From the NCBI RefSeq assembly GCF_963853765.1, contig NC_088855.1, positions 36,766,001-36,830,000 of the forward strand: 64,000 bases of DNA, in the 5' to 3' direction. The translations under genes were made by a program, and so were the position numbers. The DNA is from Magallana gigas. Taxonomy: Eukaryota. The notes under the pieces are model-generated. The model did not search any database, was not told where the DNA came from, and saw nothing but the letters and a program-made list of their open reading frames with translations. This document shows, piece after piece, positions 290 to 61,458 of this stretch (within the stretch, counting starts at the first letter, position 1; each line of letters opens with the position of its first letter).

Positions 290-2072
290 CATGTATCTGG
301 ATTGCTATTGGATGCTTGGATCACCCATTTAATATTTTTGGATGCTATTCAATGAGTTTTAGACAGTGCTACTGTAATTAGGATATATAAATGTGCCAAA
401 CAAATTTAATTATCAGACAGAGGGTATATAAAAAAATTAACCGTAGATACAGTAAAACTTGGTTATATCGCAATTCTAGTGACCATTTGATTTACTTTTG
501 CTTTATCTGTAATTTGTTAGTACTGTACGTGTAACAAATTTTTAATAATAAACAAAGCAAATTCGTTTTATACATGTTTTCTTCTACATAACCACCATTT
601 ATGTTTATTAAGGCATTAATATTTCAAAAGTACATTTTAGGAAACTGAAACTAATCTAATTGGTTACTGAAAAATAAATTTATTTATACTATTATATCAA
701 TTAGTATTTCTAACTTCAACAATTTTAAACCATTCATTAAAAACGATGAAAATTTTTATATTTTATACCTATACGAAGCTCAAAATCAGCATTGCTACAA
801 CTGTAAATCCATTATAACCAAGTTTGTTTTTAACCATAAAATTTCACAAGGATTAGTGAAGAAGACTGCCGGGGACTTTGCAAAACTTTGCTACATAAGA
901 TATTTCGCTATATTTGTGTTTGTACTAAACTGTATAATGTTTATTCAACTTTTGAGTCATTTTACCCAAAAGCACTGACACAGAGAATACAGGTCATGTC
1001 CTTATCATTTTCTCATTGGGATTTACCTGGTAAACAATGAAAATAAATTTGGATTTTCCAGTTATAAAATTGAGTTAATCAGTATATTAGCTTTATAGTC
1101 ATAAGAGGAAGCAATAGATGTTCTTTAATGACCTGTATTATAGAGAGGCCCATGGAATGACTCTAACTTGATAAGGAAATTCATCTAAAAGTGGTTAATA
1201 TGACATTTTATAAATTTGATTCAAGATCCATCATTATACATTCATATCAAGGGTCTGAAGCCCTCTTTAGCAATTGCCAATGCAATTTTGCTCTCCTGCC
1301 TTCTTATTCGTAAGATTCTGCCTTGTTTTTTAATAAAACATTTCTCATAAAAACAAAGTTAAAAGTTTATTAAAATTTTATGAACATACATTTTATGAAT
1401 ATGTGTACCAGGTCCAAAGTTGATGAGCATTTCGTTAATTTATATTTCATGAATAGTCCAAAGTTTATTAGAATACATAACTTTGAACTGGAACTCAAAT
1501 AAGCACTTAATGTAATTGAGAACTCTTATACTTTTATCACTCAGAGAATTCATTCTATAACTGTTAACATGAATTAATAATCATGTTTTTCTACAGATTC
1601 AAAAATTCATTATATCTGCAGGTATCCTTAGTCTGTTATTCAGTGGGCCAACTGATTATTGCATCAAAACTGTTATTGTAAAGAAATTCTATTCTACAAT
1701 CTATAGTTAATGTGAATCTACATGTATTTACTTTCTTTATGATGATGAATTGAATAAGTATATAATTGGCTTCACATGAATTGCTTATATCTATTCTTTC
1801 AACAAAATAAAATTGAATCATCACTGGAACATTTTCCCAAAATGTATGATTATTTTAGGTAAAATGGGTCTTTATTTTATTGACAAGAAAAGACTATTAA
1901 ACAGGATGTGCAAGTTATATATAAGTCAAGTAATACATGTATCTATCTAAATTTGGTTTTTTTGGTCAGATACTGTATGGACTTGTATCACAGTATCAGT
2001 ATGTTTGAATATTTATCTAAAGCAAACATTAGGGAATGTTTCATTCTTTTGCTTATATTTTTTTCCCAACAG

Positions 2073-2488
2073 TATTCCTCACTCAGAAGCACGAGAGACA
2101 GTTAAAGTATGATACAACAAGACCTGTGTCAGGAAAACCCTCAGAGAAAAAGAACAACCAGAGAAGGAAGTCTGCAGGTCCTAAACTAGCAGGGGGCCAG
2201 CTACAGAGAGAACAGGAGTATCTAAACCAAGGTCCTGTAGATGCAGCAGACAGCAAAGAGGAAGGGTCTCCTAGCAACACTCCTACTCAGCAATATGAGG
2301 AGGAGGAGTCAGATGAGGACCAGCAGCCAATCAGAATCAAGATGAAGGCACACCCAAAACGTCCACAGCATGTGGACAAATTTTGTAATGATCTGCAGGA
2401 AATGGAGGAGATGGAAAATGAATTCAAGAAAAACACGATAGCTCTGCAAAAGAAACTGGGCATTGGTGATACGGGGATGGTTTTTTAG
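2073..2488 (+). CDS. Terminal coding exon of an unidentified gene; charged low-complexity region followed by a short predicted helix/coiled coil (DLQEMEEMENEFKKNTIALQKKLGI)
   Basis: Polypyrimidine tract and CAG acceptor at 2070-2072 (ttttttcccaacag). Open frame to TAG at 2486-2488, with higher GC than the flanks. Family not recognised. Confidence 0.7.
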
Positions 2489-3297: not shown

Positions 3298-4759
3298 TCA
3301 AGGAGCTGGATTGAACAGCATTTGATCCGATGGTACAATGTGTAGGGTTAGGTTCAAACAGGCAAACAGTGGATGCGGGTTTCCTTCATAACTGAAGATC
3401 TTCAGTACGATTATGTAGGCCCCCTGTATGAAATAGATTATCAAAGTGTGTATAGAAATATGACATTAAATATTTAGCATATATAGATATATATAGATAT
3501 ATTAGTTTTTCATTTTTAATGATGGAATTTAAGACTTTCCTTAATTTTATTAGCTTAAAAAGTACATAAATGAACAGAAACTCGCACAAAAAAAAAAGTC
3601 TTTTCATTTATTGCATGAAATTTTTAAATGAATTAAAAAAACTTACGACTGGCAATCTGTTCAAATCGCTGTATTTGTATTGAAACTTATGATTATCTGT
3701 TAAAGAGAAAACGGGTTTCATACTATTGTCAGTTGCATGAGAAATATATAGACTGCTTGTAAATATTAAAGTGAGACGTCAGAAAAGGACATTCAGACAT
3801 ATTTACGTCATTTTAAAAGATATATGAAGAATTAAATGATCGTCTTATACTAGTAAAATATGTACTTAAGAAAAATGGGAGAAAAGTAAGAAAAAAAAAC
3901 ACCAAAAAAAACAAAAACGAGACAGCGCCAACAATTGACATACTAAGTATGGTTTTAAAGAACAATATGCACGTATCTAAGATGTTTTAACATAAAGACT
4001 AAGTTGCTTTGTCATAAACTGACGTAGGACTAAGAGGTCATTATCATAGTTTACAGGTTTACAGATACTTTTGTGATTTACTACCTCCTTTCTTCAAAGG
4101 ACATTGTATAAGCGGTGTCACTTTACTGATATCATTGCAAGCGATCTCTTGAACCACAGAGAAAATAGGATCAGAGCTGCCCTCCATGTACACATCTACA
4201 TTGGCTTGACCCTTTCCGAAGTCTATGGCTGTTTAAGAAAAAAAACCCCGATTTATCAACATGATTATTGCAAGTAGACTTAAAACATAGAATTAACATA
4301 CGCACGCACGCAAGCCCCCCCCCCCCCCCCCAACTCATTTGCATGAAATATATCTTACGATTTGTGATGTCGAAATATAACTGGATAGACTTATCCGGGT
4401 CAATAACTTTCGGTCTCCATGAAACATTCAAATGGGCTCCATCTGGTCCTAAGAAGAAAAAAAATACGATAACAAGCAATTCAGATATAATGATAAATGC
4501 AGTCAATATATTATTGCTCACCACAAACAACGGCTGTTCCCGTATTGTTATCAACTTTAAACTTGTTCTGAAAGCTAGCAGCATTGTATGCGTCCGAAGG
4601 CAGCGAAGACCCAATGGATCTCTGTTCCTCGCTACTTTTCCCGCCAGATCGAATGGTCTCCTTGACTGAGCGTCCACTCCTACTACCGTTCCCCTGGGTG
4701 AACGAGAGAGCGACGAAGACAATGATGGAAGCCAATAACTGTACTATCAGACTGTTCAT
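3298..4759 (-). CDS. ML-1: secreted MD-2-related lipid-recognition (ML) domain protein, LY96/LY86-like, 215 aa
   Basis: Exons 4759-4522, 4448-4359, 4228-4085, 3696-3647, 3423-3298 (238+90+144+50+126 nt), all GT-AG. Signal peptide MNSLIVQLLASIIVFVALSFT. Domain: C|GPDGAHLNVSWRPKVIDPDKSIQLYFDITN|PIDFGKGQANVDVYMEGSSDPIFSVVQEIACNDISKVTPLIQCPLKKG|DNHKFQYKYSDLNRLPV|GAYIIVLKIFSYEGNPHPLFACLNLTLHIVPSDQMLFNPAP*. Confidence 0.9.
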
Positions 4760-6136: not shown

Positions 6137-6202
6137 TCAAACTTTGATACTCGAACAGGCAAACAGTGGAATGTGGAGCATTTGTTCAATGGTGTAAGAT
6201 CC
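6137..6202 (-). pseudogene. Orphan, internally shortened ML exon-5 copy
   Basis: AG|GGA TCT TAC ACC ATT...CCA CTG TTT GCC TGT...TGA translates GSYTIEQMLHIPLFACSSIKV*. It matches both ends of the family's exon 5. No convincing exons 1-4 nearby. Confidence 0.75.
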
Positions 6203-7070
6203 CTCTGCGAAAACTCTTTGATTTAAATATACATTCCTTAATTTCATGAATTGTTTAAATGTTGACGACTTTTTCTATGGAGAACGTAAATCTGACAAAT
6301 ACTGATGGTTGTTAACTTTTTCTATTTTCAAGACCATTAAATAAACGAACGGATATATCAACTTAACGGAACTGATACTTTATTATAACTATAACATTCA
6401 GTGCCACTTGAAAGTTGTTTAATTATAAGTGCGTGTATGTTAATCATTAAGGAGCCAATCGTCTCCGAAAGATGTACTACAGCGACTAACCCGGATCTGG
6501 ATTGATGGAACAAATATAGTGCATGATAGGAAAATGATTTTGCATTGTATATTACTGCATATATCTGCTGTAAGTTTCTTAACAATGACGTATTTCATGT
6601 GGAAGTAAACAAATGAAACACTATCATTTTCATCATTTTAGAGACTTCTATGGTTAATTAATAGGTAAAAAGTACTCAAAATTGCAAAATAAGACATAGG
6701 CTACTAGCATTTGAACTATGTACACATCTTTATGTATCTGATGAACGATGTCACTGAATGTCAAATAAACATATTTGTTTTTTCATTGCATTGTAATGGG
6801 AGAGTCCATGGTGGAGTCGGTTAACCTGTTGTGATGCACAATATGTATTATTATACTTTCATGTTAAATACTGAAATCTGATTGGTTTAGACGCAGTTGA
6901 TATTCCGTTCTATTACCCTCAGCGTTAGCAACACACTTGGCAATGGGTAACACAACGAATTGTTACATGCGCGTAAATGATGCGCGTACGGTTCGCCGTA
7001 AAAATTCAAGTCATTCCTATAGAAAAGCAGTTTAGTTTTCTTTAAAATTATGACATTCAGTATAATAAAA

Positions 7071-7211
7071 TAAATAGTGCCTGTTTGGGAGGATAACAGT
7101 CGAAATCGACACCCCTCGAAAACCATTGTCAACCTCCGCTTCGCGTCGGTTGACAATAGTTTTCTGGGGGTGTCAATTTCGACTGTTACCTTCCCAAACA
7201 GGCACTATTTA
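7071..7211. mobile_element. ~140 bp near-perfect palindromic (foldback) repeat element
   Basis: Arms taaatagtgcctgtttgggaggataacagtcgaaatcgacacccc...aaccattgtcaacc and ggttgacaatagtttt...ggggtgtcaatttcgactgttaccttcccaaacaggcactattta, around a loop tccgcttcgcgtc. Confidence 0.8.
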
Positions 7212-7552
7212 TATAATGGCACGCATAAATTTAAACATACAACAAATCATTAAAATCATTATATTTTATTAAAAGATTATTTAATAACAACAAAGAAAAC
7301 CAACACAGATATAGACGTTTATCACACGTTTCATCATTATAACAATATGAAAAATGTCATTTCACACAGCCTATAGAACTTTATCTTCTAAAACTATCAT
7401 ATTCCTGTTTATCATTATCCATATTTTTTTCCGACTCGATCTTAATTAGTATAATTATCTATCGTTAACATCAGGAAATGTGTTAGAGCATAACTGATGG
7501 GGGAAATAATTGAATATTTCTGATGATGGAATGGCAAGGTCCACGTGTTTTT

Positions 7553-9091
7553 CTAAACAAGCTGTACCGTGAAGTTCAAACAGGCAAAGAGTGGATGTGG
7601 GTTTCCTTCGTAGCTAAAGATCTTAAGTGCGATGGTGTACGTTCCCTGTACAAAAATATCAAAATTTTGATTGTCACAAAATCATTAACTATATATCAAT
7701 ATGTTTCACCGATTCAGGTTTACTTCAGTCAACGTTTTTTTAATAAGATTGAAGAATTAAAGGATTAAAACAATATGGAGCATTTACCTAATTGCATCAT
7801 GTGATTGCATTAATCAAATATTTAATCTATTTTGTTTGACTCTCTACAAAAAATAAAGTTAAAAAAAATAAAGATGTAAAGAACTTACAGGTTTAAGCGC
7901 TTTTAATTTGTTGTACTCGAGAGAATGTACAAGTCTATCTGTTAAATAAAAAAAAACACCATATAATGTATAAAAGACTAAAACTAGTATTAATCTCTGA
8001 TTCAATATACATGTATAACATTGAGCGATGTTTTAAAAATTAATTCAATTAAGCAAAATAATGCAAGTTAATTTAATTTACTTACTTCCCTTTTTTAGAG
8101 GGCATTTAACAAATGGGGCCACTTGAGCAATTTGACTGCATGACATGTCTTGATCCAAGGAGAACATCGGGTCACTGCTACCCTTTTGATATAACTCTAA
8201 GTGAACCTGGCCCTTGTCGAAGTCGATGGCTGATAACAGAAAGAAAAATGTAATTAGTTTTCAATTTTTGGAAAAACATTCAATTTTAAAAGATGAAAAG
8301 CATAAGTGAGAGATATCTTACGATAAGTGATGTCAAAATCAACCTTGACGGACTTCTGGGAGTCGACGACCTTCGGTTCCCATGTGATGTTAAAGTGAGC
8401 TCCCTCTGGTCCTGCAAAGTCGGGTTTGAAAACTTATGTATCCCCATTCTTTTTTTAAATAAAGATTTTCGGCATACTCTTATTGTATTTTTGATGATAT
8501 CATACGTTTTAGAATTGTTTGCACAAAATTGACACTGCAAAGAGATCTGATCATTAACTAGAATAAACCTTTGCGTTATTTCATACAAATTTTGAAATAT
8601 TGTAAAAAGTTATCAAAAACTTACTGATTAAAGGAACATTTACAAGCTTTACGACTTCTGAGCAGTGTAAAAGCACATCGTTTTTGAATTAAGCAATTTA
8701 TGAGTAGAATGGTCCACCTACTAGTAATTAACCACCTACCACAAACAACGGCTTTTCCAGGATCGTTGTCGGTTTGGTCTAACCACCGTAAGCCGGAGAG
8801 CGGCAACATTGTTTTCATCTTTCTCAAGCTAGCAGCATTGGATGCCTTTGTCAACAGCGAAGATAACGAGGTCCAAGAGTTACTATTGTCTTCTGGGATT
8901 TCAAAACTAGCAGTATCTTCTTGTCCCTCCTCTCCTCTTCTCCAGCCAAATCGGATGATCTCCCTGATATTTATTTGTTTGTTGACCACGGCATATTTTG
9001 GGAGTCCCCTCCCCTCTCCATCCTCTTGGGAGAATGCAAGACTGACGAAGACAACGACGCAAACCAAAAACTGTGCAGCTAGAGTCTTCAT
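7553..9091 (-). CDS. ML-2: secreted ML-domain protein, LY96/LY86-like, 242 aa
   Basis: Exons 9091-8740, 8411-8322, 8229-8086, 7938-7889, 7645-7553 (352+90+144+50+93 nt). Domain: C|GPEGAHFNITWEPKVVDSQKSVKVDFDITY|PIDFDKGQVHLELYQKGSSDPMFSLDQDMSCSQIAQVAPFVKCPLKKG|NRLVHSLEYNKLKALKP|GTYTIALKIFSYEGNPHPLFACLNFTVQLV*. Confidence 0.9.
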
Positions 9092-9139
9092 GATCAATTC
9101 CTGTAGGTGAGAATTGAACTGTAACTACAAATCATCAAA

Positions 9140-10470: not shown

Positions 10471-10549
<79 letters not shown>
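10471..10549. repeat. (GA)n microsatellite at the start of the putative 5' UTR intron of ML-2
   Basis: Direct read; ends ~14 nt from the minus-strand donor AAG|GTAAGA at 10564/10563. Confidence 0.95.
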
Positions 10550-13150: not shown

Positions 13151-14549
13151 TTACAAATGGCCAACTATTTCTGATGACGGATTGACAAACACACGTTTTG
13201 AAGGAACAATCTGCAGAGTTATGTTTAAACAGGCGAACAATGGAGGTGGATTTTTTTCATAACTGAAGATTTTTGCCACAACAGTGTAAGATCCCTGTAA
13301 GAAAAATGATTATAAGATTATAAATTAGTATGCCGGTCAAACATAATGAACTATGTTACAAATGATTACAGAATGCATGTGTAGTGCTTTTATCAATTTG
13401 TGTTCATAATTATTGAAATCATTAACTAATTTCAGAATCCAAATTCATAAAAGCTTGACCTCTTAAACCATATTTTGAAAAAGCGAGAAAACTCAAATCA
13501 TGTGAAAACCACATTTATAAATGAACCTACCTCGGGTACCCTATTCAAATCACTGTATCGGAAAGAATAAACATGTCTGTCTGTAAAATATAATTTTTGG
13601 ATAATAATGCAAATAACATAAATGAAACAAATACACCAATTTGTGCTTTATGATAAAGATATCAATACTTCATTCAATACCTCCTTTTTTTAACGGACAT
13701 CCTATAAAGGGGGCTACGTGATTGAGGTCATTGCAACCCACGTCTTGGTCCAGGGAGAAAATTGGGTCAGGACTACCTTCCATATAGACGTCTAAGTGGG
13801 CTAGACCCTTGTTGAAGTCGATAGCTATTTAGCAGAATGACATAATTAATCATTCTTAGCTTTTTTTGCATAAGATTACTAGCATATTCTATACATGGAA
13901 AAAATCTTACGATTGGTGACGTCGAAGTAAATCATGACAGACTTTTGTGGATCAATGACCTTTGGAACCCATGAAATGTTTAGATGAGCACCTTTTGGTC
14001 CTGTAAAGATAGATTAAACCTTATGTAATATTCTGGTATTTTTATATGCAAAGATCATATTTAACTATAAAATCCAAACAATTCATGACAACCATTCAAC
14101 AAAATTAGGACATATTATAAGAATTTCAAGAATTGTGGATATTGAAAAGAAGTCTCTGTAGATGGTCCTTCAAATAACTGTTGTTACCTACCACAAACAC
14201 TGGCTGTTCCTGTGTTGTTTTCTGCTTTATCTAACCACTGCAAGCCGGACAATGGCAGCATGCCTTTCAGGTTTTTCAAATTAGCGGCATTATGGGCCTT
14301 CGTCATTAGCGAAGACAGCGAAGTAAGCGAAGAATCAAATACTCCATTGTTCTCTGGGACTTCAATTTTCGCATTCTCTCCTTTCACATCCCCTCCTCTC
14401 CCTCCAAATCGGATGATCTCCTTGATATTTATTTGTTTGTCGATCACAACATAGTTTGTGTCTGATCTTGTTTTTCCGTCCTCTTGTGAAAACGAAAGAC
14501 TGACGAAAGAAATGATTGACAGCAACACTTGTACCTTTAATCTAGTCAT
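13151..14549 (-). CDS. ML-3: secreted ML-domain protein, LY96/LY86-like, 261 aa
   Basis: Exons 14549-14192, 14000-13911, 13824-13681, 13580-13531, 13294-13151 (358+90+144+50+144 nt). Domain: C|GPKGAHLNISWVPKVIDPQKSVMIYFDVTN|PIDFNKGLAHLDVYMEGSPDPIFSLDQDVGCNDLNHVAPFIGCPLKKG|DRHVYSFRYSDLNRVPE|GSYTVVAKIFSYEKNPPPLFACLNITLQIVPSKRVFVNPSSEIVGHL*. Confidence 0.9.

Positions 14550-15435: not shown

Positions 15436-15438
<3 letters not shown>

Positions 15439-15485
<47 letters not shown>
15439..15485. repeat. (GA)n microsatellite at the start of the putative 5' UTR intron of ML-3
   Basis: Direct read; 25 nt from the donor AAG|GTAAGG at 15511/15510. Confidence 0.95.
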
Positions 15486-18446: not shown

Positions 18447-19738
18447 TTAGACGACGTGTAAGGTGAAGTTCAAGCAGGCAAACAGATAGTGTTGGTTTCC
18501 TTCATAACTAACGATTTTTGCCACAATAACGTAATATCCCTGAAAAAAAAAATTACAAGACGTTTAATTCATAATTTTATATGGATTAAAAATATTCTAA
18601 ACCATGAAGCATATTTATGTGCTAAGGATAAATTGCTTATTTTTATAAAAAAGATATTTATTTAGATAAATGCTGGAGAAAATGGATTAATAACCATAAA
18701 AGAACTTACACCAGGTATTTTTTCTAAACTGTGGTAATGACGAGAAACAGAAAGTTTTTCTGTAAACAAATTTTTTTGCACAATTAATTTTAAAGGCAAT
18801 ACTACACGTAAAACAAACAAATGTACAAGTCAGAGCGAAATTTTAAAAAAAAGTATTGCTTTATTTAATACCTCCTTTTTTCAATGGACATGATGTAAAG
18901 GGGTCAACACTTTTGATATCAGTGCAAGCGAAGTCTGCAGCCAATGAAAAAATTGGGTTTGGACTACCATCAATATAGACATCTAAGTGGACTTGACCAT
19001 AGTTGAAGTCAATAGCTGTTGAGCATATAACGTGATTATAAAATACTTATATTTCAAGCATATGTATTGCTTATCATTATAGATCAAAATTGAAGATATC
19101 TTACGATTAGTGATATCGATGAAAATCCTGACGGATTTGTTTGTATCAATCACCTTTGGTACCCATGAAATATTTAGATGAGCACCATTTGGTCCTGTAA
19201 AGATAACAAGTTAAACCTGATGTAAAATTCTTGTATTCTTATGCCTAGATCATATGAAACTATAAAACACCAAACAATTCAAGACAATCATTCAACAAAA
19301 TAAAGACATTTTATTAGAATTTCAAGAACTGTGGATATAAACACATAATTTTAAAATAAAGATTTCTCTATAGAGTGGTCCAGCAAAATACTGTTGTTAC
19401 CTACCACAAACGATGGCTGTCCCTGTGTTGTTTTTTGCTTTAACCAACCCCTTCAAGCCAGACAACGGCACCATATTTTTCGAACTAGTAGCACTGTGGG
19501 CATCTGCCAGCAGTGGAGACAGCAAAGATTCTGACAAATCTTTGTCTGCTGAGACTTTATTCTTGGTTGTCTCTCTTTTCACCTCAACTTTTTTCCCACC
19601 AAATCGGATTATCTCTTTGATATTGAATTGCTTGTCAGCATAGTTTGAGCGTCCCCTTTCTTGTCTGTTCCCTTGGGAGAATGAGAAACTGACGATTACA
19701 GTGGTGGAAACCAACAGTTGTATGGTTAAACTAGTCAT
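18447..19738 (-). CDS. ML-4: secreted ML-domain protein, LY96/LY86-like, 236 aa
   Basis: Exons 19738-19405, 19194-19105, 19015-18872, 18759-18710, 18539-18447 (334+90+144+50+93 nt). Domain: C|GPNGAHLNISWVPKVIDTNKSVRIFIDITN|PIDFNYGQVHLDVYIDGSPNPIFSLAADFACTDIKSVDPFTSCPLKKG|EKLSVSRHYHSLEKIPG|GYYVIVAKIVSYEGNQHYLFACLNFTLHVV*. Confidence 0.9.
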
Positions 19739-21298
19739 CACAAGTACTGAAAACAAGAACAAATAAAATGTTAAAAAAATAGATTTTCAAGTTTGAAAGT
19801 CATTGACACATTGAACTTAAAGTCAAACAATTTATGTTTTCAAATAATACATTTATAAGCATTTGAAAATCACGTTTAGGGCCAGATAGAAAAATATTAT
19901 TTTCCTCTGTTTCGTTTGATTTAATTTGCAAAAATTCTATGCTGGCATTAAGTATAAAGATGTATATATTGATAGGTCATATCCAATCAAACTTGTTTTG
20001 GCTTTTTTTATTCAAGACAGACATAGCTATTTTAATGTAAATAGTGATGCATCACGCATTAGAATCACTTCTTTTTTGTTCTAAGAAATCAATTATTTTG
20101 ACGTTTTGGTACTTTGTTTTAGTAGTATAACTTTTAGGAATATGGATTATTAAGATTATTGCGTTCTTAGGACACTGTATATTAAGTTTTCTATTCATTT
20201 TTGTATAAAAATACCTATTTCAAAAGAGTTAGATAGTGAATATTTTAAAAACTTACAGTTCATTTATTACATGTAATTAAAACATAATTAACATTTGCAT
20301 ATGCAGTACAAAAATAACGGATCAAAGGATCATATTCATGACGACCTATATTGACGTTAGCGTAAAACAGAAGTTTCTTATAATGTTTGTAAAAAGAGTA
20401 AAGTTGAAAGAAAAATCAATAGAATATGGCAAAACTTATTTTTTCTGTAGATAAAATCGGTATAAAATTTAGATTTTAAACGATTGAGATGAATCATCCC
20501 AAATCCCCTTTTTTGGAATATTAATACTTAGAGAAGAGTGACATATCTAGGACCTTCCATGGGATAAAACTAAGCTAAATATTTGTATATCGCATGCCAA
20601 TGTATGACAATGTTATATGTAACATTATAAGATATTTTTGGATAACAGAACAACTGCATTTCTTTATATTTACATCTACAAAGTATTATTCCCTCTATTT
20701 CTTACGGAAACCTATAGTTAATTCATAGCTCTATATAAACAGCCAGACTGAAATCTACACGCCCCGTTTATCAATTGGTCGAAATCTACAGCTGCTGAAA
20801 CTAATAAGAAACTGACAGGACATATATAGACACGCCCTGTTTATCGATTAGTCCAAACCTACAGCGACCTAGAAAAAATCACAAACTGCACAAAATAATC
20901 ATGACGATGTCAGACTCAAAGTCTCACAGGAGACGATTTGGCTGTTTCTTTTAGCTAACGTACTTACGTACATTGAGAGTAATTTAGTGAATTTTACTTA
21001 CTTTTCATAATCAATTTATCAATTAGCTAAAAGAAATATGTTAATTAATGTAAACAATAAAATGCTTTCTTTGATGATTCATTCGGGTTATGTAGGTAGC
21101 GACCAATGCAGAAAAAATTTACATAACGCAGGTTATGTATTTTTTCTGCAATATCGCTACCTTCATATCCCGAATGAATCACCAAAGAAAGCATTTTATT
21201 GTTTAAATAAAACAGTACATGCACATCTTTTTAAATCACCTTATCTGAAAAAAAGCCGATGATACTGAGAAATATACAACCAAAACGCACAATATCAA

Positions 21299-21302
<4 letters not shown>

Positions 21303-21362
<60 letters not shown>
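21303..21362. repeat. (GA)n microsatellite at the start of the putative 5' UTR intron of ML-4
   Basis: Direct read; ~17 nt from the donor AAG|GTAGGA at 21380/21379. Confidence 0.95.
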
Positions 21363-22744: not shown

Positions 22745-24545
22745 TTACAAATGATCAAATTCATATTGTCCTTGGATTGGTGGTTTGGCAAGCATTTGAT
22801 CTGTTTCTTTTACCCTCAGGGTGAAGTTCAGACAGGCAAACAGCGCATGAGGGTTTGTATCATAACTGATGATCTTCAACACTATAGTATAAGCCCCCTG
22901 TACAAATAGAAGTATAACATAAGTATAAGTTATCATAATAATCAAGTATCATCGAACTATACATTTTATTTCACTAGTTTTTCCCTTTTCTTATTCAACA
23001 CACTGATTTAAAAATACCGGTAATCATCAAGAGTAAAAATAAACTTACGACAGGTACTCGACTTAAATCGCTGTAACTGAATGGTACTTTAATTCTATCT
23101 GGAAAAAGAGGAAACTTGTACAAAATAATGACAATGCCATACAGAAAACCATTAACGTCCATTGCATTAACAAATAATTTTGATTATTTAAGATTAAAGG
23201 ATAAGAACCGAGTTAAAATTTAAGTATGAAAACAAAATGCAACATTTTATGTCAATCTGCATAGTAAAGCATAAAAAAACCAAATAAACAAACAAAAAAA
23301 GGAAACAAACACCCACCCCCCCCCCCAAAAAAAAAACCCCGAAACAATTGACATGCATAATATTTGCTATAGAAAATAAATGTAAACGAAAACAAACTCT
23401 AAGACACTTGAAATTCATTTGTTTTATTTGCTCAAATCAGATTTAAAATTAATTTGAATTGTCCTTAAGCAAAAAATGCCGGGTTGAATACCCAGGCAAA
23501 TCTTATGAAATACAAAAAAAACCCAACTCCTTTCACTTTTTTTTTGTCGTGAAGCTACCTATAATACGGATTTTTTCTGATTACTTTTCCTTTTAACATT
23601 AAGAGCTTCAGAAGTATGGTATAATTAGAATAAATAAAGTCGTTCCAAATTAAAGTCTATAAAAGTCTATCAAGAATAACTTCAAATATCATAACATTCA
23701 ACTTAAATACTAGTTGTTTTAGTACGTACTTCCTTTTTTCAGAGGACATGTAATAAGTTTAGTCATCTGATGAATGTCATTACATGCGATGTCTTGGTCA
23801 ACGGAGAAAACTGGGTCAGGGCTATCCTCCAGATACACATCAATGTGACCTTGACCGTGGCCGAAATCAATAGCTATTTAAACAAATAAACGATAATAAT
23901 TTTTTAAAAATTCTTATTATTGCTAAAAAAAAATTGAACATTTATAAAGCCCTCTTACGATTGATGATGTCCAAATAAAATTTGATCGCCTTTTCTCTAT
24001 CGACGAGTTTTGGTGTCCATGAAACGTTCAAGTGGGCTCCCGGTGGTCCTGTCAAAGAAATTTTTGACATTTTCTAAGTTAGTTATTATTTAAACTTTAA
24101 ACGACAACTTTTAAAAAATAAAATTTTTCCTGAAAACCATATTAAGATTTTTAAAGATTATTGAAAAATAAACTATTGATAAAGAATTGCATGTTCTTAA
24201 ACTTAGTTGCCTACCACAAACGATGGCAGTTCCTGTGTCCGATAGCTCTAGGCCAGACAATGGCAACATATTTTTCATCTTCCTCAAATTAATAGCATTG
24301 GATACCCTCGTTAAAAGAGAAGTCAGTGATGATCCGGATTCCGCATTATCCTTGGGACTATCAAATTCTGAGACCTCTCCATTTGCATCGCCCCTTCTAC
24401 CAAATCTTATGATTTCCTTAACATTGATTTTCTTGTCGACCAGGACATAGTTTGGGCGTCCACGTCCCTCCCCGTCCTCCTGAGAGAACGAGAGACTGAT
24501 GAAGACAATGATGGATGCCAAGCACTGTATTGCCAGACTTTTCAT
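22745..24545 (-). CDS. ML-5: secreted ML-domain protein, LY96/LY86-like, 255 aa
   Basis: Exons 24545-24215, 24048-23959, 23873-23730, 23098-23049, 22897-22745 (331+90+144+50+153 nt). Domain: C|GPPGAHLNVSWTPKLVDREKAIKFYLDIIN|PIDFGHGQGHIDVYLEDSPDPVFSVDQDIACNDIHQMTKLITCPLKKG|NRIKVPFSYSDLSRVPV|GAYTIVLKIISYDTNPHALFACLNFTLRVKETDQMLAKPPIQGQYEFDHL*. Confidence 0.9.
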
Positions 24546-29399: not shown

Positions 29400-31119
29400 T
29401 TACGGTGCTGATTCCAAAAACATGTATGTTGATGGTCTAACCTCTAAGGTAACATTCAGACACACAAACAGCGCTTGGGTGTTTTGTAAATAACTGTACA
29501 CATTCAACACAATAGTGAAAGATCCCTGGAAGTAGAAAGTCGTATTTTACTAAAAATAATTATTTAGCATTAAATATGTTAATGAATACTTTTTTTTTTT
29601 AGAATTTTTGTATTAACCTCAAAATGAAATTTTATCAATTACCAAAGTGAATTCTTTGCTCTTTATGACACATTAACGAGTTTTATATACACCTTTTCTA
29701 TAGAATTCTCTATTTTTTCATTTGCAGAGGCTTTAAAGTATGTAAAAACAAAATCTTTATTAACAACTCGAACATTTACATGGGGGCTAAATACAGATAT
29801 GTCCACCGACAAAAACTTACGACTGGTAATGCTTGTAACTGGTTGAAATGCAAAGGAATTCTAGAAAACTTATCTGCAAATCAAAAGTTAAATTTTTCAT
29901 CGAACAAAAATGTTGATTAAATAACAGTATTGTAAAATTCACATTGTAATGAAGGCAATGAATACAAAAAACAAATTTCAAACCTCCTTTTTTTAGAGGG
30001 CACAGAATGGGATACAATTTAATAAAGTCATCACAAGCGATTTCTTGATCCATTGAAAAAAGTCTGTCAGGGCTACCTTTCAAATACACATCAACATGGG
30101 CCTTACCCTCGGTAAAGTTCGTAGCTGTGTAACAAAAAAAATTGTTCTTTTTAAAAAAAACGTTGTTTAAAAAAATATCAATGAGAAATATCAAAATATT
30201 GTTGTAAATAAGCCTTACGAGCAATGAAGTCGACATGAATCTGGACGAACCTTTCCGGGTCGATTATTTTTGGTTTCCATGTTACGTTAAATTCAGCACC
30301 TTCTGGTCCTTGAATTAAATTTAAATGTTGAAATAATTGTTATTTTTAAAGAGAATATTTATCTTTCAATAAGATCTTTTCTAAATTAGCTTACTCATGC
30401 GCTAAGGCCCATTAATATTATATACGAAGTTAGTTTTTCTTGTCTCTGCATAAAATCTATTGAATTCTTGATTTTAACACATAAATTGTTAAATTTGTTG
30501 GTAATACATAATCTTAGTAATAAATCATACTCAAAAGTCAACAACTCAACCATTTATCAATAGTTAGACAAAAACACATATCTTGGTCAAGTAATAATGC
30601 AAACAAACATTGATTCAATCCTCATTTCCCACTGATATTAAGGACATATCCTTTTTTAACGGAAACAGGCTTTTAAAAAAAAGGTGAAATAATTATGCAT
30701 TCTAATTATATAACGCTTCCTCTTTTCCATTTACAATGATTGTAAATGCTAAAAGAAAAATTGAAGGCACCACAAACAATAGCTCGTCCCGTGTTATTGT
30801 CTGTTTCTTTATTAATTGGTGTCGGCAACAACATTTTTGTCTTCCCCAAACTAGCATCAGTTGACGCCTTTATCGGCAAAAATAGCATAGATGCAAGTGA
30901 TCTGTATTTCTGGTGAACTTCTCCCTGCGCATCGCCTGCCCTCTCGCCATATCGGATGATCTCCTTGATACTGACTGGTTTGTTCACGATACTTTTTGGT
31001 CTTTTTCGCTCTGTTGCGTCCTGTTGGGAAAGCGAGAGACTGACAGACACAAGAAGGAGAAGTTTTATGGGCAGTCTTGTCTTTATCAAAGTCTGCAAGC
31101 AAAATTGAACGAAAATCAT
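29400..31119 (-). CDS. ML-6: secreted ML-domain protein, LY96/LY86-like, ~252 aa (start codon uncertain)
   Basis: Exons 31119-30771, 30308-30219, 30124-29984, 29873-29821, 29525-29400 (349+90+141+53+126 nt). Domain: C|GPEGAEFNVTWKPKIIDPERFVQIHVDFIA|PTNFTEGKAHVDVYLKGSPDRLFSMDQEIACDDFIKLYPILCPLKKG|DKFSRIPLHFNQLQALPV|GSFTIVLNVYSYLQNTQALFVCLNVTLEVRPSTYMFLESAP*. The first donor, GTGCCT, is weak. Confidence 0.85.

Positions 31120-31868: not shown

Positions 31869-31924
<56 letters not shown>
31869..31924. repeat. (GA)n microsatellite at the start of the putative 5' UTR intron of ML-6
   Basis: Direct read; 30 nt from a donor ATG|GTAAGA at 31955/31954, with ACCAGGAAGA at 32051-32042. Confidence 0.95.
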
Positions 31925-35885: not shown

Positions 35886-35910
35886 TTATTAGGTTAGTTA
35901 CTGACTCACT

Positions 35911-35946
<36 letters not shown>

Positions 35947-35964
35947 GGAGGCGAAGCCGAGCCG

Positions 35965-35997
<33 letters not shown>

Positions 35998-36062
35998 AGT
36001 GAGTCAGTAACGGAAATATATTGGTTGATCAATTTCATAGATGGCGAGGCGAAGCCGAGCCG

Positions 36063-36095
<33 letters not shown>

Positions 36096-36120
36096 AGTGA
36101 GTCAGTAACTAACCTAATAA
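35886..36120. mobile_element. Palindromic element with a tandemly duplicated ~99 bp hairpin unit
   Basis: Outer ends ttattaggttagttactgactcact / agtgagtcagtaactaacctaataa. Inside, two units of ggaaatatattgggttgatcaatctcatagatgg-gaggcgaagccgag-ccgtctatgagattgatcaacccaatatatttcc. Confidence 0.8.
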
Positions 36121-48818: not shown

Positions 48819-50137
48819 TTATGATGTAGCAATGTGGAGGGTGAAGTTCACACAGGCAACCAGTGGTGGATTTGCCTCAAAACTGAAGATTTTCAAAACA
48901 ATGGTATACGATCCCTGTAAGAAATACATTATCAAAATTTATCTGCATTCGAATTTAGAGAGATAATGATGGGTAAAATAATATATAGTTCTGGTATGTG
49001 GATATTTCACAAAAAATTTACCACAGGTAGGTCGTCTAACTTGCTGTATTGAATCGCAAATCTGATTGGCGCTATAAAAAAGTGTACAAAATATTATCTT
49101 TTGTATTTGTCACACATATATCAATTTTGAGATATTTTGATTTATTTTCAATCTTAATTTACATACCTCCTTTTTTTAAAGGGCACATTATTAAAGGGTC
49201 CAGTTGTTTAAAGAAACTACAAGATGTTTCTCGATCCACGGAATACATTGGGTAAGAGCTACCTTTTAGATATACATCAAGAATCCCATGACCTTTGTCG
49301 AAGTATGTTGCTGTCATGCAAAACAAATTACATGTAATTATACAAAGACAAAAACTGTAAAGAAGAAAAATTATTTTTTCTGTTAAATACATAGATAAAT
49401 TAGGCTTTCATAAAGGCGATTTTATGAAACAATTTTCATAACATCTCTTCTTGAAACGATCAAAGATTCTTGTCATAGATCGAGATATAACGATTACTTG
49501 TTTAATAATTACACTAAAAGGAATTTCGACTATATAACTCAGTCATATTGCTTTTGCTTACGACTGATGATGTCAAAGTATATTCTAACACACTTATACG
49601 GGTCAATCACTTTGGGTCTCCACGTAATGTTCAGATGAGCACCTTTTGGTCCTTTAAAAAAAAAATCATTTTAAATATTAACGAAATAAAAATGTAATTA
49701 AGAATAAAGGTAAAAGATATATAAGGCATTGAGTAAAATTGATTTTGAGCAAGTGTGTTTGTAAATAAAGTAAATGTTCATTCTATTTTATTACCACAAA
49801 CAATGACTGTTCCCGTATTGTTATCAGCTTCATCTGACAACTGCAGTCCCACCAGCGACAGCTTATTTTTCAGAAATTTTAACTTTGCGTCAGTTGATGT
49901 CTTTGCAAACAGAAAAGACTTGGAAGACCATAAGGATTCGTTGTTCTGTATGATCTCAAAATCCTCAATGTTTTTATTCTGTGATTCGACCCTTTTTCTA
50001 TCGATGAAAATTTTGTAATTGAATTTCTTGCTGACCGTGGCATAGCGTTGGGAATTCCGTCTTGCTCCATCCTCATGAGAGACAGACTGACTGATGAAAA
50101 CAACGACGAATGCCAGTTGTACCGATAGATTCATCAT
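48819..50137 (-). CDS. ML-8: secreted ML-domain protein, LY96/LY86-like, 240 aa (5-Cys subfamily, closest paralog of ML-7)
   Basis: Exons 50137-49795, 49651-49562, 49310-49167, 49071-49022, 48914-48819 (343+90+144+50+96 nt). Domain: C|GPKGAHLNITWRPKVIDPYKCVRIYFDIIS|PTYFDKGHGILDVYLKGSSYPMYSVDRETSCSFFKQLDPLIMCPLKKG|APIRFAIQYSKLDDLPV|GSYTIVLKIFSFEANPPLVACVNFTLHIATS*. Confidence 0.9.
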
Positions 50138-54441: not shown

Positions 54442-56169
54442 TCAAACAATATCTTCTGAAGTCTTAGAAATGATTTGAGGTGTTTGAGTGGCGGACATAT
54501 GCTTTGATGATTCAATCTGTAGACTAAAGTTCAAACAAGCAAACAGTGGTGGAGGTTTAGCAGCGTAACTGAAGATCTTCAACAAAACGATATAAGACCC
54601 CTGTATAAAAAAATCGATAAATGAGAACGTCTAATGGTTTCATGATACTCGTGAATCAGCATTAATTCAAATTCCAAAGAACTCGTATACAAGGATATAT
54701 CAAACTCTATTGCATTGGTTTAAATTTCAACTGCAGAACTTGTAAACAGCTATGACTTCCTCAGAAAACTATATCTTATATGAATTGTCACATCAACGAA
54801 TGTTAAAAATATTGTTGCAATAAAAACAGTATTATTTTGTGTGCATACAATCTAAATAATAATTCATTTAGAAATTTTAGCATTGAATTCTCTGTTGGTT
54901 CTCTTTGTGTCTTTTACTGTGAACAAGAACCACAACAAACTTTTTGCTTTTAGTTTTAGAGCATTATGAAACACTAAGGTAAAACCAGTCTATTGCACCA
55001 AAATCCTTCGTTATTACAGGACAGTGCTTGGTGAAAGCTACATGCAAAAATAACATTTACATGTACATACTAGAGAAAAAATACTTACAGCAGGTTGTAA
55101 TTGTGTTTCGCTGTACTTAAACGATATGCGGAAACCATCTGTAAAAATAAAAGAGATGGAGAGAATGTTAGTTTATACGTTAAAATAAATGACGAATGAA
55201 AATATGTTTTAAAACACGATAAAACAACTGCATAAAGCTTAATAGAAATAAGACTCAGTTTCCGTACTCCCTCTTTTTATAGGACATCTTATAAGTGGGA
55301 CCCAATTATTGATGTCAGTGCAGGTTATCCCTTCATCAATAGAGAAAACTGGGTTGGGTATACCCTTTCTATAGACATCTATGCGAGCGAGACCCTCCTT
55401 AAAATCGATGGCTGTTGAGCAAAAAAAAATATTGATAGTTTCGTTTGATCATTCATATTTCTTTGAATAATGCAATATGTGATTTCGAATACGTCTTACG
55501 ATAAACAAGATCCAGGTATATCTGGACTGATTTTTCGGTACTGATGACTTTTGGTTTCCATGTTATGTTCAGATGAGCACCTTCTGGTCCTTTGAAAAAA
55601 CAGAAAATTGATAATATTAATTAACTGCCTTTATTTTACTGAAAATAAAACTTTAAGTTTCAAAACTCCTTGAATATTTGAACTATTAGTTGTAGACACA
55701 AAAATCGTTTATATACAAGCTTTATTAAATACAAATCCTGAAATATAAGTACCTGGCAGCATATAAGTATGTTTCAAAACGGTTGTCCAATATTCAATGA
55801 AGAAACGTGCATCATTATAAAAAAAAGTAAAAGATATTTACCACAAACAAATGCTGTTCCTGTGCTGTTATCAGTATTATTGAACCACTGTAAACCTTTT
55901 GATTGGAACATATCATTATTCAATTTAAAGGCATTGGATATTTTCGTTAAAAAAGAAGACAGCTGAGATTTATTGGATTCCTTTTCCTCAGCATTCTCTC
56001 TCACTGTTACACTTTTTGTCTCGCCTATTCGTATAATCTCTTCGACATTGATTTTTTTGTCGAATAGAAGATAGTTTGTGTGTCCTTTTACTTCTTTGTC
56101 CTTTTGTGAGAAGGAGATACTGCTGAAAACAGCTATAGATGCCAACAGTTGTACAGCTAGGATTTTCAT
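54442..56169 (-). CDS. ML-9: secreted ML-domain protein, LY96/LY86-like, 256 aa
   Basis: Exons 56169-55842, 55589-55500, 55411-55268, 55138-55089, 54600-54442 (328+90+144+50+159 nt). Domain: C|GPEGAHLNITWKPKVISTEKSVQIYLDLVY|PIDFKEGLARIDVYRKGIPNPVFSIDEGITCTDINNWVPLIRCPIKRG|NGFRISFKYSETQLQPA|GSYIVLLKIFSYAAKPPPLFACLNFSLQIESSKHMSATQTPQIISKTSEDIV*. Confidence 0.9.
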
Positions 56170-59722: not shown

Positions 59723-61458
59723 CTATACATATTGGAACGTAAAGTTCAAACACGAGAACAGTAATGGGGGATTTTCAGCATAGCTAAATATCTTCATCAC
59801 CAAAATTTGTTCTTTTACCTATAAAAAAAAAATGTTCAACATTTACCAATCCCAATTCATATTTAAGAATTTGATAACGCTGTGACATCTGTTTCCAATA
59901 ACTAGTGATACCAAATTTTTTTTCGATAAAATCAACATTAGACAAAAAGAGGGGGGATGAAAAAAAATGGCGTTGGAAATTAAAACTGAAAGTGCGCAGA
60001 ATACAGAAAAATCCTCGGCAAACAGGAATAAGCGTCAATGTCTAACAGGTCACTCTAGTAAAATAAGATCATTGAAAAGTTTATCTCCACATATGAGAAA
60101 TTAATTTCTTAAGGAAGAAATACTGCAAACAATGACTTTTGATAGAATATCTTCTTTCAGGAATTTATCTCTCATTGATATCATTGATTTGCCTGGGCAA
60201 TGATAAAAGAAACCCAATAGATCAAAAGAGGTAGTAACAGGCTACCTACGTATGATCTGAAAAGGAACTTACGAGTGGTGGCTGTCGTAATGGGAAATCA
60301 GTATAAGAATATTGGATTCTTTCTGTAAACGAAGAAATTATTCGTATAAAGCAAAGTCATCGTTGTAAAAATAAGGGCTAGTAACCCAAATTATTAAAAA
60401 TGAAAGATCTTTAAAAAGAATTAACAATTTCTTTACTCACCTCCTTTTTCCAAAGGACATTTTTGTTGCATCTTTGGGACTTTTAGGATGTCACTGCAAG
60501 TTATATCTTCGTCCAATGAGAAAATTGGGGTATTTCCTAAGTAAAATTCCACGTACATCCGACCCTTGTTGAAGTCAGTAGCTGTTTTAAAGAAGAATTA
60601 ATATAATAACTAAATGATAAATGAGTCGTTCTTTTATATTTTTCCTCCACAAATACAACATTGTATAACTATTTATCTTACGACTGATCATGTCTACAGA
60701 AAACGTGACCGGTTTTCCAAATTCGATTATTTTGGGTATCCACGTGACGTTCAGGTGAGCTCCTTTTGGTCCTAATGAGGAAAAATCCATTTATGAGCAT
60801 ATTTTTTTTAATTTATGTTTTATTTCACTTATAATTAAGGGGTGTAGGAAACCCTCGTTTTGAAACAAAACTGTCTTTCGAAATAAACTACAAATATATC
60901 TTTTTTCTCTTGTTTTATACAAAGGAACTTCAGTTGGTTACGAATGTAAATTTTGTTATACATTTTGCACCTTAATAAGTTCTGAAATCTAAAAAAGTCC
61001 ATTTTCAATATTTTAAAACAGTGGTAAAACTTTGTACTCTCATCCATATAAAGATCTCAGAGTATTCCATACGACCTTAATTTCAGTCTTACTGTGTGTC
61101 TTAAAGGTATTCTTTACAAGTATAAAGATGGAACGGTCCATAGAACTATCATCGTACCACAAACCACAGCAGTTCCTGTGTTATTGTCGGCATTATCATC
61201 TCCCAAGGTAACAGCTTCGGAAGCGTTCGCCAGCAGCTGAGACAGTAAATATCCGAGGTTTTTCTTTTCATGGGGAGCTTCCATCTCTCCATGTGACTCG
61301 TCTCTTATTCCGCCAAATCGGATGATCTCCTTGATACTGATTTTCTTGTCGAAAACAACATAGGTTGGGTGGTCCCTGCCTTCTCCGTCCTCTTTGGAGA
61401 ACGAAAGACTAATGAAGACAATGATGGAAGCCAAAAACTGTACAGCCAAGCTTTTCAT
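59723..61458 (-). CDS. ML-10: secreted ML-domain protein, LY96/LY86-like, 225 aa (most divergent domain)
   Basis: Exons 61458-61158, 60771-60682, 60581-60441, 60322-60273, 59818-59723 (301+90+141+50+96 nt). Domain: C|GPKGAHLNVTWIPKIIEFGKPVTFSVDMIS|PTDFNKGRMYVEFYLGNTPIFSLDEDITCSDILKVPKMQQKCPLEKG|ERIQYSYTDFPLRQPPL|VKEQILVMKIFSYAENPPLLFSCLNFTFQYV*. Confidence 0.88.

What the first reader, a model, noticed from the sequence alone, without database searches (positions are those of the whole stretch)
8740..9091. Long hypervariable N-terminal extension in exon 1 with a conserved K.I.I(K/R)EIIRFG core
Seen: the first domain Cys lies at residue 79-119 (ML-1 79, ML-2 117, ML-3 119, ML-4 111, ML-5 110, ML-6 116, ML-7 113, ML-8 114, ML-9 109, ML-10 100), versus 37 in human MD-2. 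The segment is indel-rich but keeps three islands: a YxxxxKxIxIxEIIRFG motif, an amphipathic-looking LSSLLTKASNA stretch, and DNNTGTAVVC. ML-7/8 have lost the EIIRFG motif. Established: canonical ML proteins place the domain directly after the signal peptide. Inference: a removable pro-peptide that gates the lipid pocket, an oligomerisation or membrane-binding arm, or a separately released peptide. Coordinates shown are for ML-2.
Basis: partly seen in the sequence, partly recalled or inferred. Interest (0 to 1): 0.7.

Follow-up and report, generated by a model that had tools for sequence, protein, structure and literature searches.

The report
Oyster-only disordered arm on ML proteins
Ten neighbouring Pacific-oyster genes for small lipid-binding (ML/MD-2-like) proteins all carry, between the secretion signal and the lipid-binding domain, an extra 50-90-residue flexible segment that exists only in oysters, is kept by selection and matches nothing known, so it is real and functional, but what it does is still unknown.

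Summary
Window 8740-9091 (minus strand) is the coding part of exon 1 of ML-2, which is Crassostrea/Magallana gigas LOC109617045. It is one of ten intact five-exon ML-domain genes in a tandem array. I reproduced all ten first-cysteine positions exactly (79-119).

- **Splicing:** a spliced transcript contig and RefSeq/UniProt models keep the whole extension.
- **Known domain:** it matches no Pfam family, PDB sequence or the ML domain itself.
- **Neutral evolution:** it is under purifying selection. dN/dS is 0.44 against 0.37 for the domain over six ortholog pairs.

Between oyster genera the extension is as conserved as the domain. The Y.VVDK.IN.[KR]EIIRFGG island is the best-conserved part of the protein (67-90% identity).

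- "Hypervariable" applies only to the acidic linker and the indels.
- DNNTGTAVVC is the first strand of the ML domain, not part of the extension.
- The LSSLL stretch is not amphipathic.
- A further island, KNMLPLSG[LI]Q, exists.

A profile of the extension hits 19 of 1.84 billion representative proteins, all oyster-family members. In this genome it hits only these ten loci. AlphaFold gives no fold (pLDDT below 50).

Best reading: an Ostreidae-specific disordered arm with conserved short motifs. Whether it stays attached or is cleaved off is unresolved.

The parts
9029..9091 (-). ML-2 signal peptide, residues 1-21 (MKTLAAQFLVCVVVFVSLAFS, then Q)
   Evidence: Basic n-region, hydrophobic core and small residues at -3/-1, read directly from the sequence. 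The same layout is seen in all 10 paralogs.
8996..9028 (-). Acidic, Gly-rich start of the mature precursor, residues 22-32 (QEDGEGRGLPK)
   Evidence: Alignments A1 and A3. Moderately conserved.
8933..8995 (-). Island 1, residues 33-53: Y.VV[DN]K.IN[IV][KR]EIIRFG plus a basic cluster
   Evidence: The best-conserved part of the whole protein between genera, at 67-90% identity. AlphaFold on the extension alone gives a weak helix at residues 42-48. The segment also has a high beta-type hydrophobic moment.
8873..8932 (-). Acidic, indel-prone variable linker, residues 54-73
   Evidence: Lowest column conservation, 0.40. Only 21-32% identical between C. gigas ML-2 and the other genera.
8828..8872 (-). 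Island 2, residues 74-88: S[LS]L...SNAA, helix-prone but not amphipathic
   Evidence: Weak AlphaFold helix at residues 75-93, pLDDT about 52. Hydrophobic moment 0.07-0.32, not above shuffles.
8783..8827 (-). Island 3, residues 89-103: [RK]K.KNMLPLSG[LI]Q
   Evidence: 53-87% identical between genera. Visible in alignment A3.
8759..8782 (-). Junction, residues 104-111. It carries the NNT sequon in most paralogs; ML-2 has lost it (NDP).
8740..8758 (-). Start of the ML domain in exon 1: first beta-strand and Cys117, plus the first base of the split Gly codon
   Evidence: DSSP strand at residues 114-116. Invariant G-x-x-x-x-C-G-P in A5. GT donor at 8739-8738.
8322..8411 (-). ML-2 exon 2
   Evidence: Transcript contig L001 maps here. 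Gene model.
8086..8229 (-). ML-2 exon 3
7889..7938 (-). ML-2 exon 4 (50 nt)
7553..7645 (-). ML-2 exon 5 coding part. The 3' UTR runs on to about 7340.
4522..4759 (-). ML-1 exon 1. Shortest extension, first Cys at 79.
14192..14549 (-). ML-3 exon 1 (first Cys at 119)
19405..19738 (-). ML-4 exon 1 (first Cys at 111)
24215..24545 (-). ML-5 exon 1 (first Cys at 110)
30771..31119 (-). ML-6 exon 1 (first Cys at 116)
39013..39352 (-). ML-7 exon 1 (first Cys at 113; EIIRFG lost)
49795..50137 (-). ML-8 exon 1 (first Cys at 114; EIIRFG lost)
   Evidence: Identical to XP_011448700.2.
55842..56169 (-). ML-9 exon 1 (first Cys at 109)
61158..61458 (-). ML-10 exon 1 (first Cys at 100)

Best explanation
**What it is (shown).** In each of the ten tandem oyster ML genes, exon 1 encodes three things in order: a signal peptide, an Ostreidae-specific region of 50-90 residues, and the first strand of the ML lipid-binding domain. 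The middle region is translated and selectively constrained. It has no detectable relative and no predicted fold.

**Its layout (shown).** Three conserved short motifs are separated by an acidic linker that tolerates insertions and deletions:
- Y.VVDK.IN[IV][KR]EIIRFGG followed by basic residues;
- S.L...SNAA;
- [RK]K.KNMLPLSG[LI]Q.

**How it most likely works (inferred).** The region is a flexible N-terminal arm on the secreted precursor. Its conserved motifs fold only when they bind a conserved partner. That partner could be a receptor, a granule-sorting or processing factor, or a microbial or membrane surface. In this way the arm would target or regulate the attached ML domain. Charge and length have diversified between paralogs, with net charge running from -6 to +8. 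Some paralogs may also be clipped at the basic cluster after RFGG.
For: **Translated and retained.**
- The spliced 1133-nt transcript contig L001 maps to 9277-8740 / 8411-8322 / 8229-8086 / 7938-7889 / 7645-7340, with an unbroken 242-codon frame.
- UniProt A0A8W8MVD2 and XP_019928834.2 match my model.
- Spliced full-length products are on record for the ML-1, 3, 4, 5 and 8 types.

**Constrained.**
- Pooled dN/dS of the extension is 0.44 (0.31-0.62) against 0.37 (0.29-0.48) for the ML domain, at dS of about 0.22.
- dS is the same in both parts, so there is no sign of an overlapping DNA element.
- Between genera island 1 is 67-90% identical, more than the domain.

**Orphan and lineage-restricted.**
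- No Pfam match and no PDB sequence match at E up to 10.
- hhalign against the ML domain gives probability 0.2%.
- A profile search of 1.84 billion representative proteins gives 19 hits, all members of this oyster family. The named ones are Crassostrea, Saccostrea and Ostrea.
- There are exactly ten hits in the 564-Mb genome, all in this window.

**Disordered.**
- AlphaFold2 gives pLDDT below 50 and no secondary structure for residues 1-111, while the ML domain reaches 70-79.
- On its own the extension gives pTM 0.16 and only two weak helices, both at the islands.
- About 29% of its residues are charged.

**Expression.** LOC109617045 is listed as a marker gene of a lysozyme-type haemocyte cluster in PMC13509791, Table 1.
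Against: - No partner is known, and no protein-level data were available on the mature N-terminus.
- The alignment is shallow (21 sequences), so a fold or an intramolecular docking mode could have been missed.
- ML-7 and ML-8 have lost EIIRFG, and ML-1 has lost much of the arm, yet all three stay intact. The motifs are therefore not indispensable to every paralog.
- Sub-region dN/dS values are too noisy to show that the islands are more constrained than the linker within Crassostrea.
- Basic clusters after RFGG and at RK.K are compatible with proteolytic removal instead.
Confidence: 0.45

Rival explanations
1. The extension is a removable pro-peptide. It keeps the ML pocket closed, or guides folding and sorting, and is cut off by proprotein convertases or granule/lysosomal proteases before the protein acts.
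For: - All 21 aligned sequences have at least one basic residue just after the RFG position, and 11 of 21 have a dibasic pair there.
- A second basic cluster, RK.K, precedes MLPLSG.
- From my own knowledge, not tested here: GM2 activator and some fungal ML proteins carry short N-terminal pro-segments.
- A disordered region would be accessible to proteases.
Against: - The dibasic pair is not conserved even between orthologs. C. gigas ML-3 has GRGG where its ortholog has GRRG, and Ostrea has GREG.
- No basic or otherwise conserved cleavage motif lies at the junction with the domain (residues 104-111).
- Cutting after RFGG would remove only about 30 residues.
- No predictor docks the arm into the pocket, but that is not evidence against it.
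Confidence: 0.25
2. The extension is an oligomerisation arm. Its helix-prone islands pair between molecules, or between paralogs, to build multimers of ML domains.
For: Two helix-prone conserved segments. Ten co-located paralogs could form mixed assemblies.
Against: - There is no heptad or amphipathic pattern. The hydrophobic moment is not above shuffles.
- The helices have low confidence.
- No test of self-association was run.
Confidence: 0.1
3. The extension is a source of separately released bioactive peptides, either an RFamide-like peptide from ...EIIRFG plus basic residues or a cationic antimicrobial fragment.
For: - ML-5 reads KK-INVKEIIRFG-RR, which looks like a dibasic-flanked, Gly-amidated RF peptide.
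- ML-2 is expressed in an 'antimicrobial' haemocyte cluster.
Against: - The RF-Gly-dibasic context is present in only a minority of paralogs.
- It breaks within the ML-5 lineage itself: RFSRRS in P0087 and RFG-RGG in P0086.
- The upstream dibasic site is KQ or KH in many sequences.
- ML-7 and ML-8 lack RF altogether.
- The helix-prone segment is not amphipathic.
Confidence: 0.07
4. The extension is a neutral spacer or an annotation artefact, such as an unrecognised intron or junk coding sequence.
For: The region is rich in indels, low in complexity and has no predicted structure.
Against: - It is retained in spliced transcripts.
- Its dN/dS interval excludes 1.
- Its motifs are conserved across Crassostrea, Saccostrea and Ostrea.
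- All ten reading frames are open and all indels are in frame.
Confidence: 0.03

Closest known systems
ML (MD-2-related lipid-recognition) family, Pfam PF02221: NPC2, Der p 2 / Der f 2, MD-1, MD-2, GM2 activator
   Same: The C-terminal 130 residues match PF02221 above its gathering cut-off. They fold as the same beta-sandwich: the top Foldseek hits are MD-1, Der f 2, GM2A, NPC2 and MD-2, with target TM-scores of 0.52-0.69. The proteins are secreted, have four invariant cysteines, and carry the CPLKKG motif that aligns to Der f 2 CPLVKG.
   Different: Canonical members start the domain within about 10-20 residues of the signal-peptide cut. A canonical ML gene in this same genome has Pfam profile position 16 at residue 19. 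In the array genes that position falls at residue 122-125. The inserted region has no counterpart in any known ML protein.
Short N-terminal pro-segments of GM2 activator protein and fungal PG/PI-transfer (NPC2-like) proteins (recalled from memory, not tested here)
   Same: A segment lies between the signal peptide and the ML fold, and it is not part of the fold.
   Different: Those pro-segments are roughly 8-20 residues long and are known to be removed. This one is 50-90 residues long, has conserved internal motifs, and its processing is unknown.
Intrinsically disordered regions carrying short linear motifs (the general class)
   Same: Conserved islands of 10-20 residues sit in a low-confidence, charged, indel-tolerant context. 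The islands show weak helix propensity.
   Different: Most well-studied examples are intracellular. Here the region is on a secreted, disulfide-bonded lipid-binding protein, and no partner is known.

Membership tests
ML domain family (PF02221) | Match to the Pfam profile above the curated gathering score | tested here: met
   P0002 scores 28.2 bits, P0007 36.5 and P0008 39.5, against a cut-off of 22.7. The matches cover residues ~122-243 only.
ML domain family (PF02221) | Immunoglobulin-like beta-sandwich fold shared with NPC2, Der p 2 and MD-2 | tested here: met
   The AlphaFold2 domain has pLDDT 70-79. Foldseek against the PDB gives MD-1, Der f 2, GM2A, NPC2 and MD-2 at E from 3.5e-7 to 1e-5.
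ML domain family (PF02221) | Conserved cysteines, with the first-strand Cys paired to a last-strand Cys plus an internal pair | tested here: inconclusive
   Four invariant Cys are present, at 117, 178, 190 and 234 of ML-2. Their pairing was not checked in the model coordinates.
ML domain family (PF02221) | Domain follows the signal peptide directly | tested here: not met
   The first domain Cys is at 79-119 in the array genes. The in-genome control gene has the domain start at residue ~19. This is a typical feature of the family rather than a strictly defining one.
ML domain family (PF02221) | Binds a lipid or sterol in the sandwich cavity | not testable with these tools
   Needs a biochemical assay.
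RFamide-type neuropeptide precursor | RF-Gly followed by a dibasic site, and a cleavage site upstream, conserved across copies | tested here: not met
   Only ML-5 has RFG-RR with KK upstream. Its close relatives read RFSRRS and RFG-RGG, and most paralogs have GG, GW, GE or GI after RF.
Proprotein-convertase-processed pro-peptide | Conserved dibasic or R-x-[KR]-R site at a fixed position | tested here: inconclusive
   A basic residue is always present after RFG(G), but a dibasic pair occurs in only 11 of 21 sequences and varies between orthologs.
Amphipathic-helix membrane-binding arm | High helical hydrophobic moment relative to composition | tested here: not met
   The hydrophobic moment of residues 75-93 is 0.07-0.32. 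Composition-matched shuffles reach or exceed it 6-93% of the time, over half of them in 18 of 21 sequences.

The most novel reading that the evidence does not exclude
Island 1 (Y.VVDK.IN.[KR]EIIRFGG plus basic residues) is a new oyster-specific docking motif. It would tether the ML lipid-binding domain to a cell-surface or granule receptor, for example one of the greatly expanded oyster TLR-type receptors, or directly to microbial lipid surfaces. Each paralog would then be a self-contained, MD-2-like co-receptor with a built-in adaptor arm. The tandem array would diversify arm charge and length to widen the range of ligands or receptors recognised.
Probability: 0.12. Interest if true: 0.7.

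Novelty: new variant of a known kind. Interest (0 to 1): 0.35.

Why it matters
ML proteins such as MD-2, MD-1 and NPC2 are compact single-domain lipid sensors and carriers. This family adds a lineage-specific, selectively maintained disordered arm with motifs better conserved than the domain itself. That would be a new way to couple lipid recognition to a partner or compartment.

The setting adds to the interest. Oyster innate immunity relies on expanded gene families, and at least one member of this array marks a haemocyte subtype.

The genes are already in public annotation as 'uncharacterized' or 'ML domain-containing'. The advance here is to describe the arm and show that it is constrained, not to discover a gene. 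Practical value is modest until the mature N-terminus and a binding partner are known.

Tried and rejected
- **Read laying.** Splicing evidence therefore rests on the Logan transcript contig L001 and on database protein models, not on raw reads.
- **Complex prediction.** I tested the extension against the ML domain as two chains. The result was no verdict (score 0.00). This is not evidence for or against binding.
- **The protein-atlas search on residues 22-116.** No usable hit.
- **Self-derivation of the extension.** hhalign of the extension against the ML domain gave probability 0.2%, so the arm is not a degenerate copy of part of the domain.
- **Known-domain searches.** PDB sequence search with the extension profile gave nothing at E up to 10. 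Pfam on all 21 extensions gave only single chance hits.
- **Nearest extension-less relatives.** The search for homologous proteins with the ML domain alone found only oyster family members. The closest relatives outside oysters could not be identified with the searches left.
- **dN/dS among the ten paralogs.** Saturated (dS above 1). I replaced it with ortholog pairs.
- **dN/dS by sub-region.** Too noisy to separate the islands from the linker.
- **Paper searches.** Searches by accession, LOC number and motif string found no description of the extension. The only hit was a marker-gene table entry.
- **RFamide idea.** Considered and rejected; see the rival explanations.
- **Earlier scan notes.** They concern neighbouring genes (PDCD6, ADCK5, SLC7A9-like) and did not bear on this finding.

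Full report
**What is at the coordinates.**
The window is AT-rich eukaryotic DNA. The reported interval, read on the minus strand, is an open frame. It starts at the ATG at 9091 and ends one base after a Cys codon (8743-8741), directly before a GT donor. tblastn with this 117-residue peptide finds ten copies in the window, all on the minus strand and spaced about 5-11 kb apart.

I located the remaining exons in three ways: conserved tblastx blocks, tblastn with ML-2 exon peptides, and a phase-aware search for the small 50-nt exon 4. All ten genes have five exons with intron phases 1,1,1,0, canonical GT/AG sites and intact frames. The proteins are 215-261 residues long.

**Identity and expression.**
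A database search returned a 242-residue product 98% identical to my ML-2 model. A member of its cluster, UniProt A0A8W8MVD2, matches the model over its full length. RefSeq calls the gene 'uncharacterized protein LOC109617045' of Crassostrea (Magallana) gigas. ML-8 is LOC105343154.

The product is carried on a 1133-nt Logan contig, L001. It aligns to the window as 9277-8740 / 8411-8322 / 8229-8086 / 7938-7889 / 7645-7340. This is a spliced transcript that contains the whole of exon 1. The extension is therefore not spliced out.

A profile of the extension hits only these ten loci in the 564-Mb assembly, so the intronless contig cannot be a retrogene. LOC109617045 appears as a marker gene of a lysozyme-type haemocyte cluster in a single-cell study (PMC13509791, Table 1). 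I worked beside those places afterwards.

**What the protein is.**
Only residues ~122-243 match Pfam, as the ML domain PF02221 above its gathering score. AlphaFold2 with a 21-sequence alignment folds that part at pLDDT 70-79. Foldseek finds MD-1, Der f 2, GM2 activator, NPC2 and MD-2 as the best structural matches.

The first strand of the domain is TGTA.VC (DSSP strand at residues 114-116). The extension proper in ML-2 is residues 22 to about 104-111.

As an in-genome control I used a canonical ML gene on another chromosome. It has Pfam profile position 16 at residue 19, straight after its signal peptide. In the array genes that position lies at residue 122-125.

**Is the extension anything known?**
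No.
- Pfam gives nothing beyond single chance hits, both for ML-2 and for all 21 extensions.
- A profile search of all PDB sequences gives no hit at E up to 10.
- Profile-profile comparison with the family's own ML domain gives probability 0.2%.
- The ESM Atlas feature search gives nothing usable.
- An HMM of the ten extensions, searched against 1.84 billion representative proteins, returns 19 hits. All are members of this same family, and many are exon-1 read-through ORFs from assemblies.

The named relatives come from Crassostrea gigas and angulata, C. virginica, Saccostrea echinata, S. cucullata and Ostrea edulis. The element is therefore restricted to true oysters (Ostreidae), at HMMER sensitivity.

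**Is it constrained?**
Yes. Paralog comparisons are saturated, with dS above 1. I therefore fetched transcript contigs of six orthologs from congeneric samples. A tree confirmed the pairings.

Pooled over 462 extension codons and 829 domain codons, at dS of about 0.22, dN/dS is 0.44 (bootstrap 0.31-0.62) for the extension and 0.37 (0.29-0.48) for the domain. dS is equal in the two parts.

Between genera the extension as a whole is 49-59% identical, against 53-62% for the domain. Island 1 (residues 33-53, Y.VVDK.IN[IV][KR]EIIRFGG plus basic residues) is 67-90% identical, which makes it the best-conserved stretch of the protein. The acidic linker (residues 54-73) drops to 21-32% between C. gigas ML-2 and the other genera.

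'Hypervariable' is thus true only of the linker and of indels between old paralogs. ML-7 and ML-8 have indeed lost EIIRFG, and ML-1 carries two deletions.

**Structure and chemistry.**
AlphaFold2 gives pLDDT below 50 and no secondary structure for residues 1-111 in all five full-length models. Folded alone, the extension has pTM 0.16 and only two weak helices, at residues 42-48 and 75-93, which are the islands.

About 29% of the residues are charged. Net charge ranges from -6 (ML-10) to +8 (ML-4). The LSSLL..SNAA..RKMK segment is not amphipathic as a helix. Its hydrophobic moment is 0.07-0.32, and 6-93% of shuffles of the same residues reach or exceed it, more than half of them in 18 of 21 sequences.

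A basic residue always follows RFG(G), but a dibasic pair occurs in only 11 of 21 sequences and flips between orthologs. The RF-Gly-dibasic arrangement that would give an RFamide peptide is present cleanly only in ML-5 and is broken in its closest relatives.

**Interpretation.**
The shown facts are these: the segment is translated, lineage-restricted, selectively maintained and has no predicted fold, and it consists of conserved short motifs joined by an indel-tolerant acidic linker. These are the properties of a disordered region that carries short linear motifs.

I therefore favour a flexible arm on the secreted precursor, whose motifs engage a conserved partner or surface and so target or regulate the ML domain (0.45). 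The alternatives are a pro-peptide removed by proteolysis (0.25), an oligomerisation arm (0.10), a source of released peptides (0.07) and a neutral spacer or artefact (0.03). The choice among the first three cannot be made from sequence. It needs the mature N-terminus from proteomics and a comparison of full-length with arm-deleted protein.

**Novelty and score.**
The genes are already annotated, as 'uncharacterized' or 'ML domain-containing'. I found no paper that describes the extension. It is a new variant of a known kind: an ML protein with an orphan, conserved N-terminal arm. It is interesting for mollusc immunity but not a surprise of wide reach. Interest 0.35.

Noticed in passing
window 42678-43106 (-): An ORF encoding a complete C1q domain (Pfam PF00386, E 1.3e-20) sits inside the ML array, between ML-7 and ML-8. 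It belongs to a second expanded oyster immune-type family embedded in the cluster.
   Followed up: partly
window 3298-3330, 13151-13204, 22745-22810, 29400-29438, 54442-54513 (-), the 3' ends of ML-1, 3, 5, 6 and 9: Half of the paralogs carry a C-terminal tail of 10-20 residues after the last ML strand (PS....NP...). Saccostrea, Ostrea and C. virginica relatives end in ...PQ[VI]I[VH]. ML-2, 4, 7, 8 and 10 stop at the strand. This is a second non-domain appendage that might be a sorting or processing signal.
   Followed up: no
window 51611-51685, 6140-6202, 44887-44988 (-): Weak matches resembling ML exon 5 lie in intergenic DNA, and the first has an in-frame stop. They are probably relics of decayed copies.
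   Followed up: no
window 7070-7212, 21045-21211, 35886-36120: Near-perfect palindromes of 143-237 bp (86-88% arm identity), MITE-like, lie in the spacers. The third overlaps a 98-bp tandem repeat at 35911-36109.
   Followed up: no
window 10471-10549, 15438-15485, 21303-21362, 31869-31924, 40926-41001: Pure (GA)n/(AG)n microsatellites recur 0.75-1.6 kb upstream of the start codons of ML-2, 3, 4, 6 and 7, although the spacers are otherwise unalignable. They may be part of the duplicated unit or a promoter-proximal feature.
   Followed up: no
L008 7235-8165 (G000:C6, about 12.469-12.470 Mb); also G000:C8, about 22.37 Mb: Canonical ML genes elsewhere in the genome start the domain straight after the signal peptide. 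The one I inspected seems to lack the first-strand cysteine and keeps the GC..SPC pair instead.
   Followed up: partly
window 9092-9110 (-), upstream of the ML-2 ATG: RefSeq isoform X1 and UniProt A0A8W8MVD2 begin MELIMKTL, which implies an alternative upstream 5' exon that adds four residues. The transcript contig L001 instead runs unspliced from 9277.
   Followed up: no
window 2036-2488 (+): An ORF of 150 residues, rich in acidic and lysine residues, has no Pfam match and lies downstream of ML-1.
   Followed up: no
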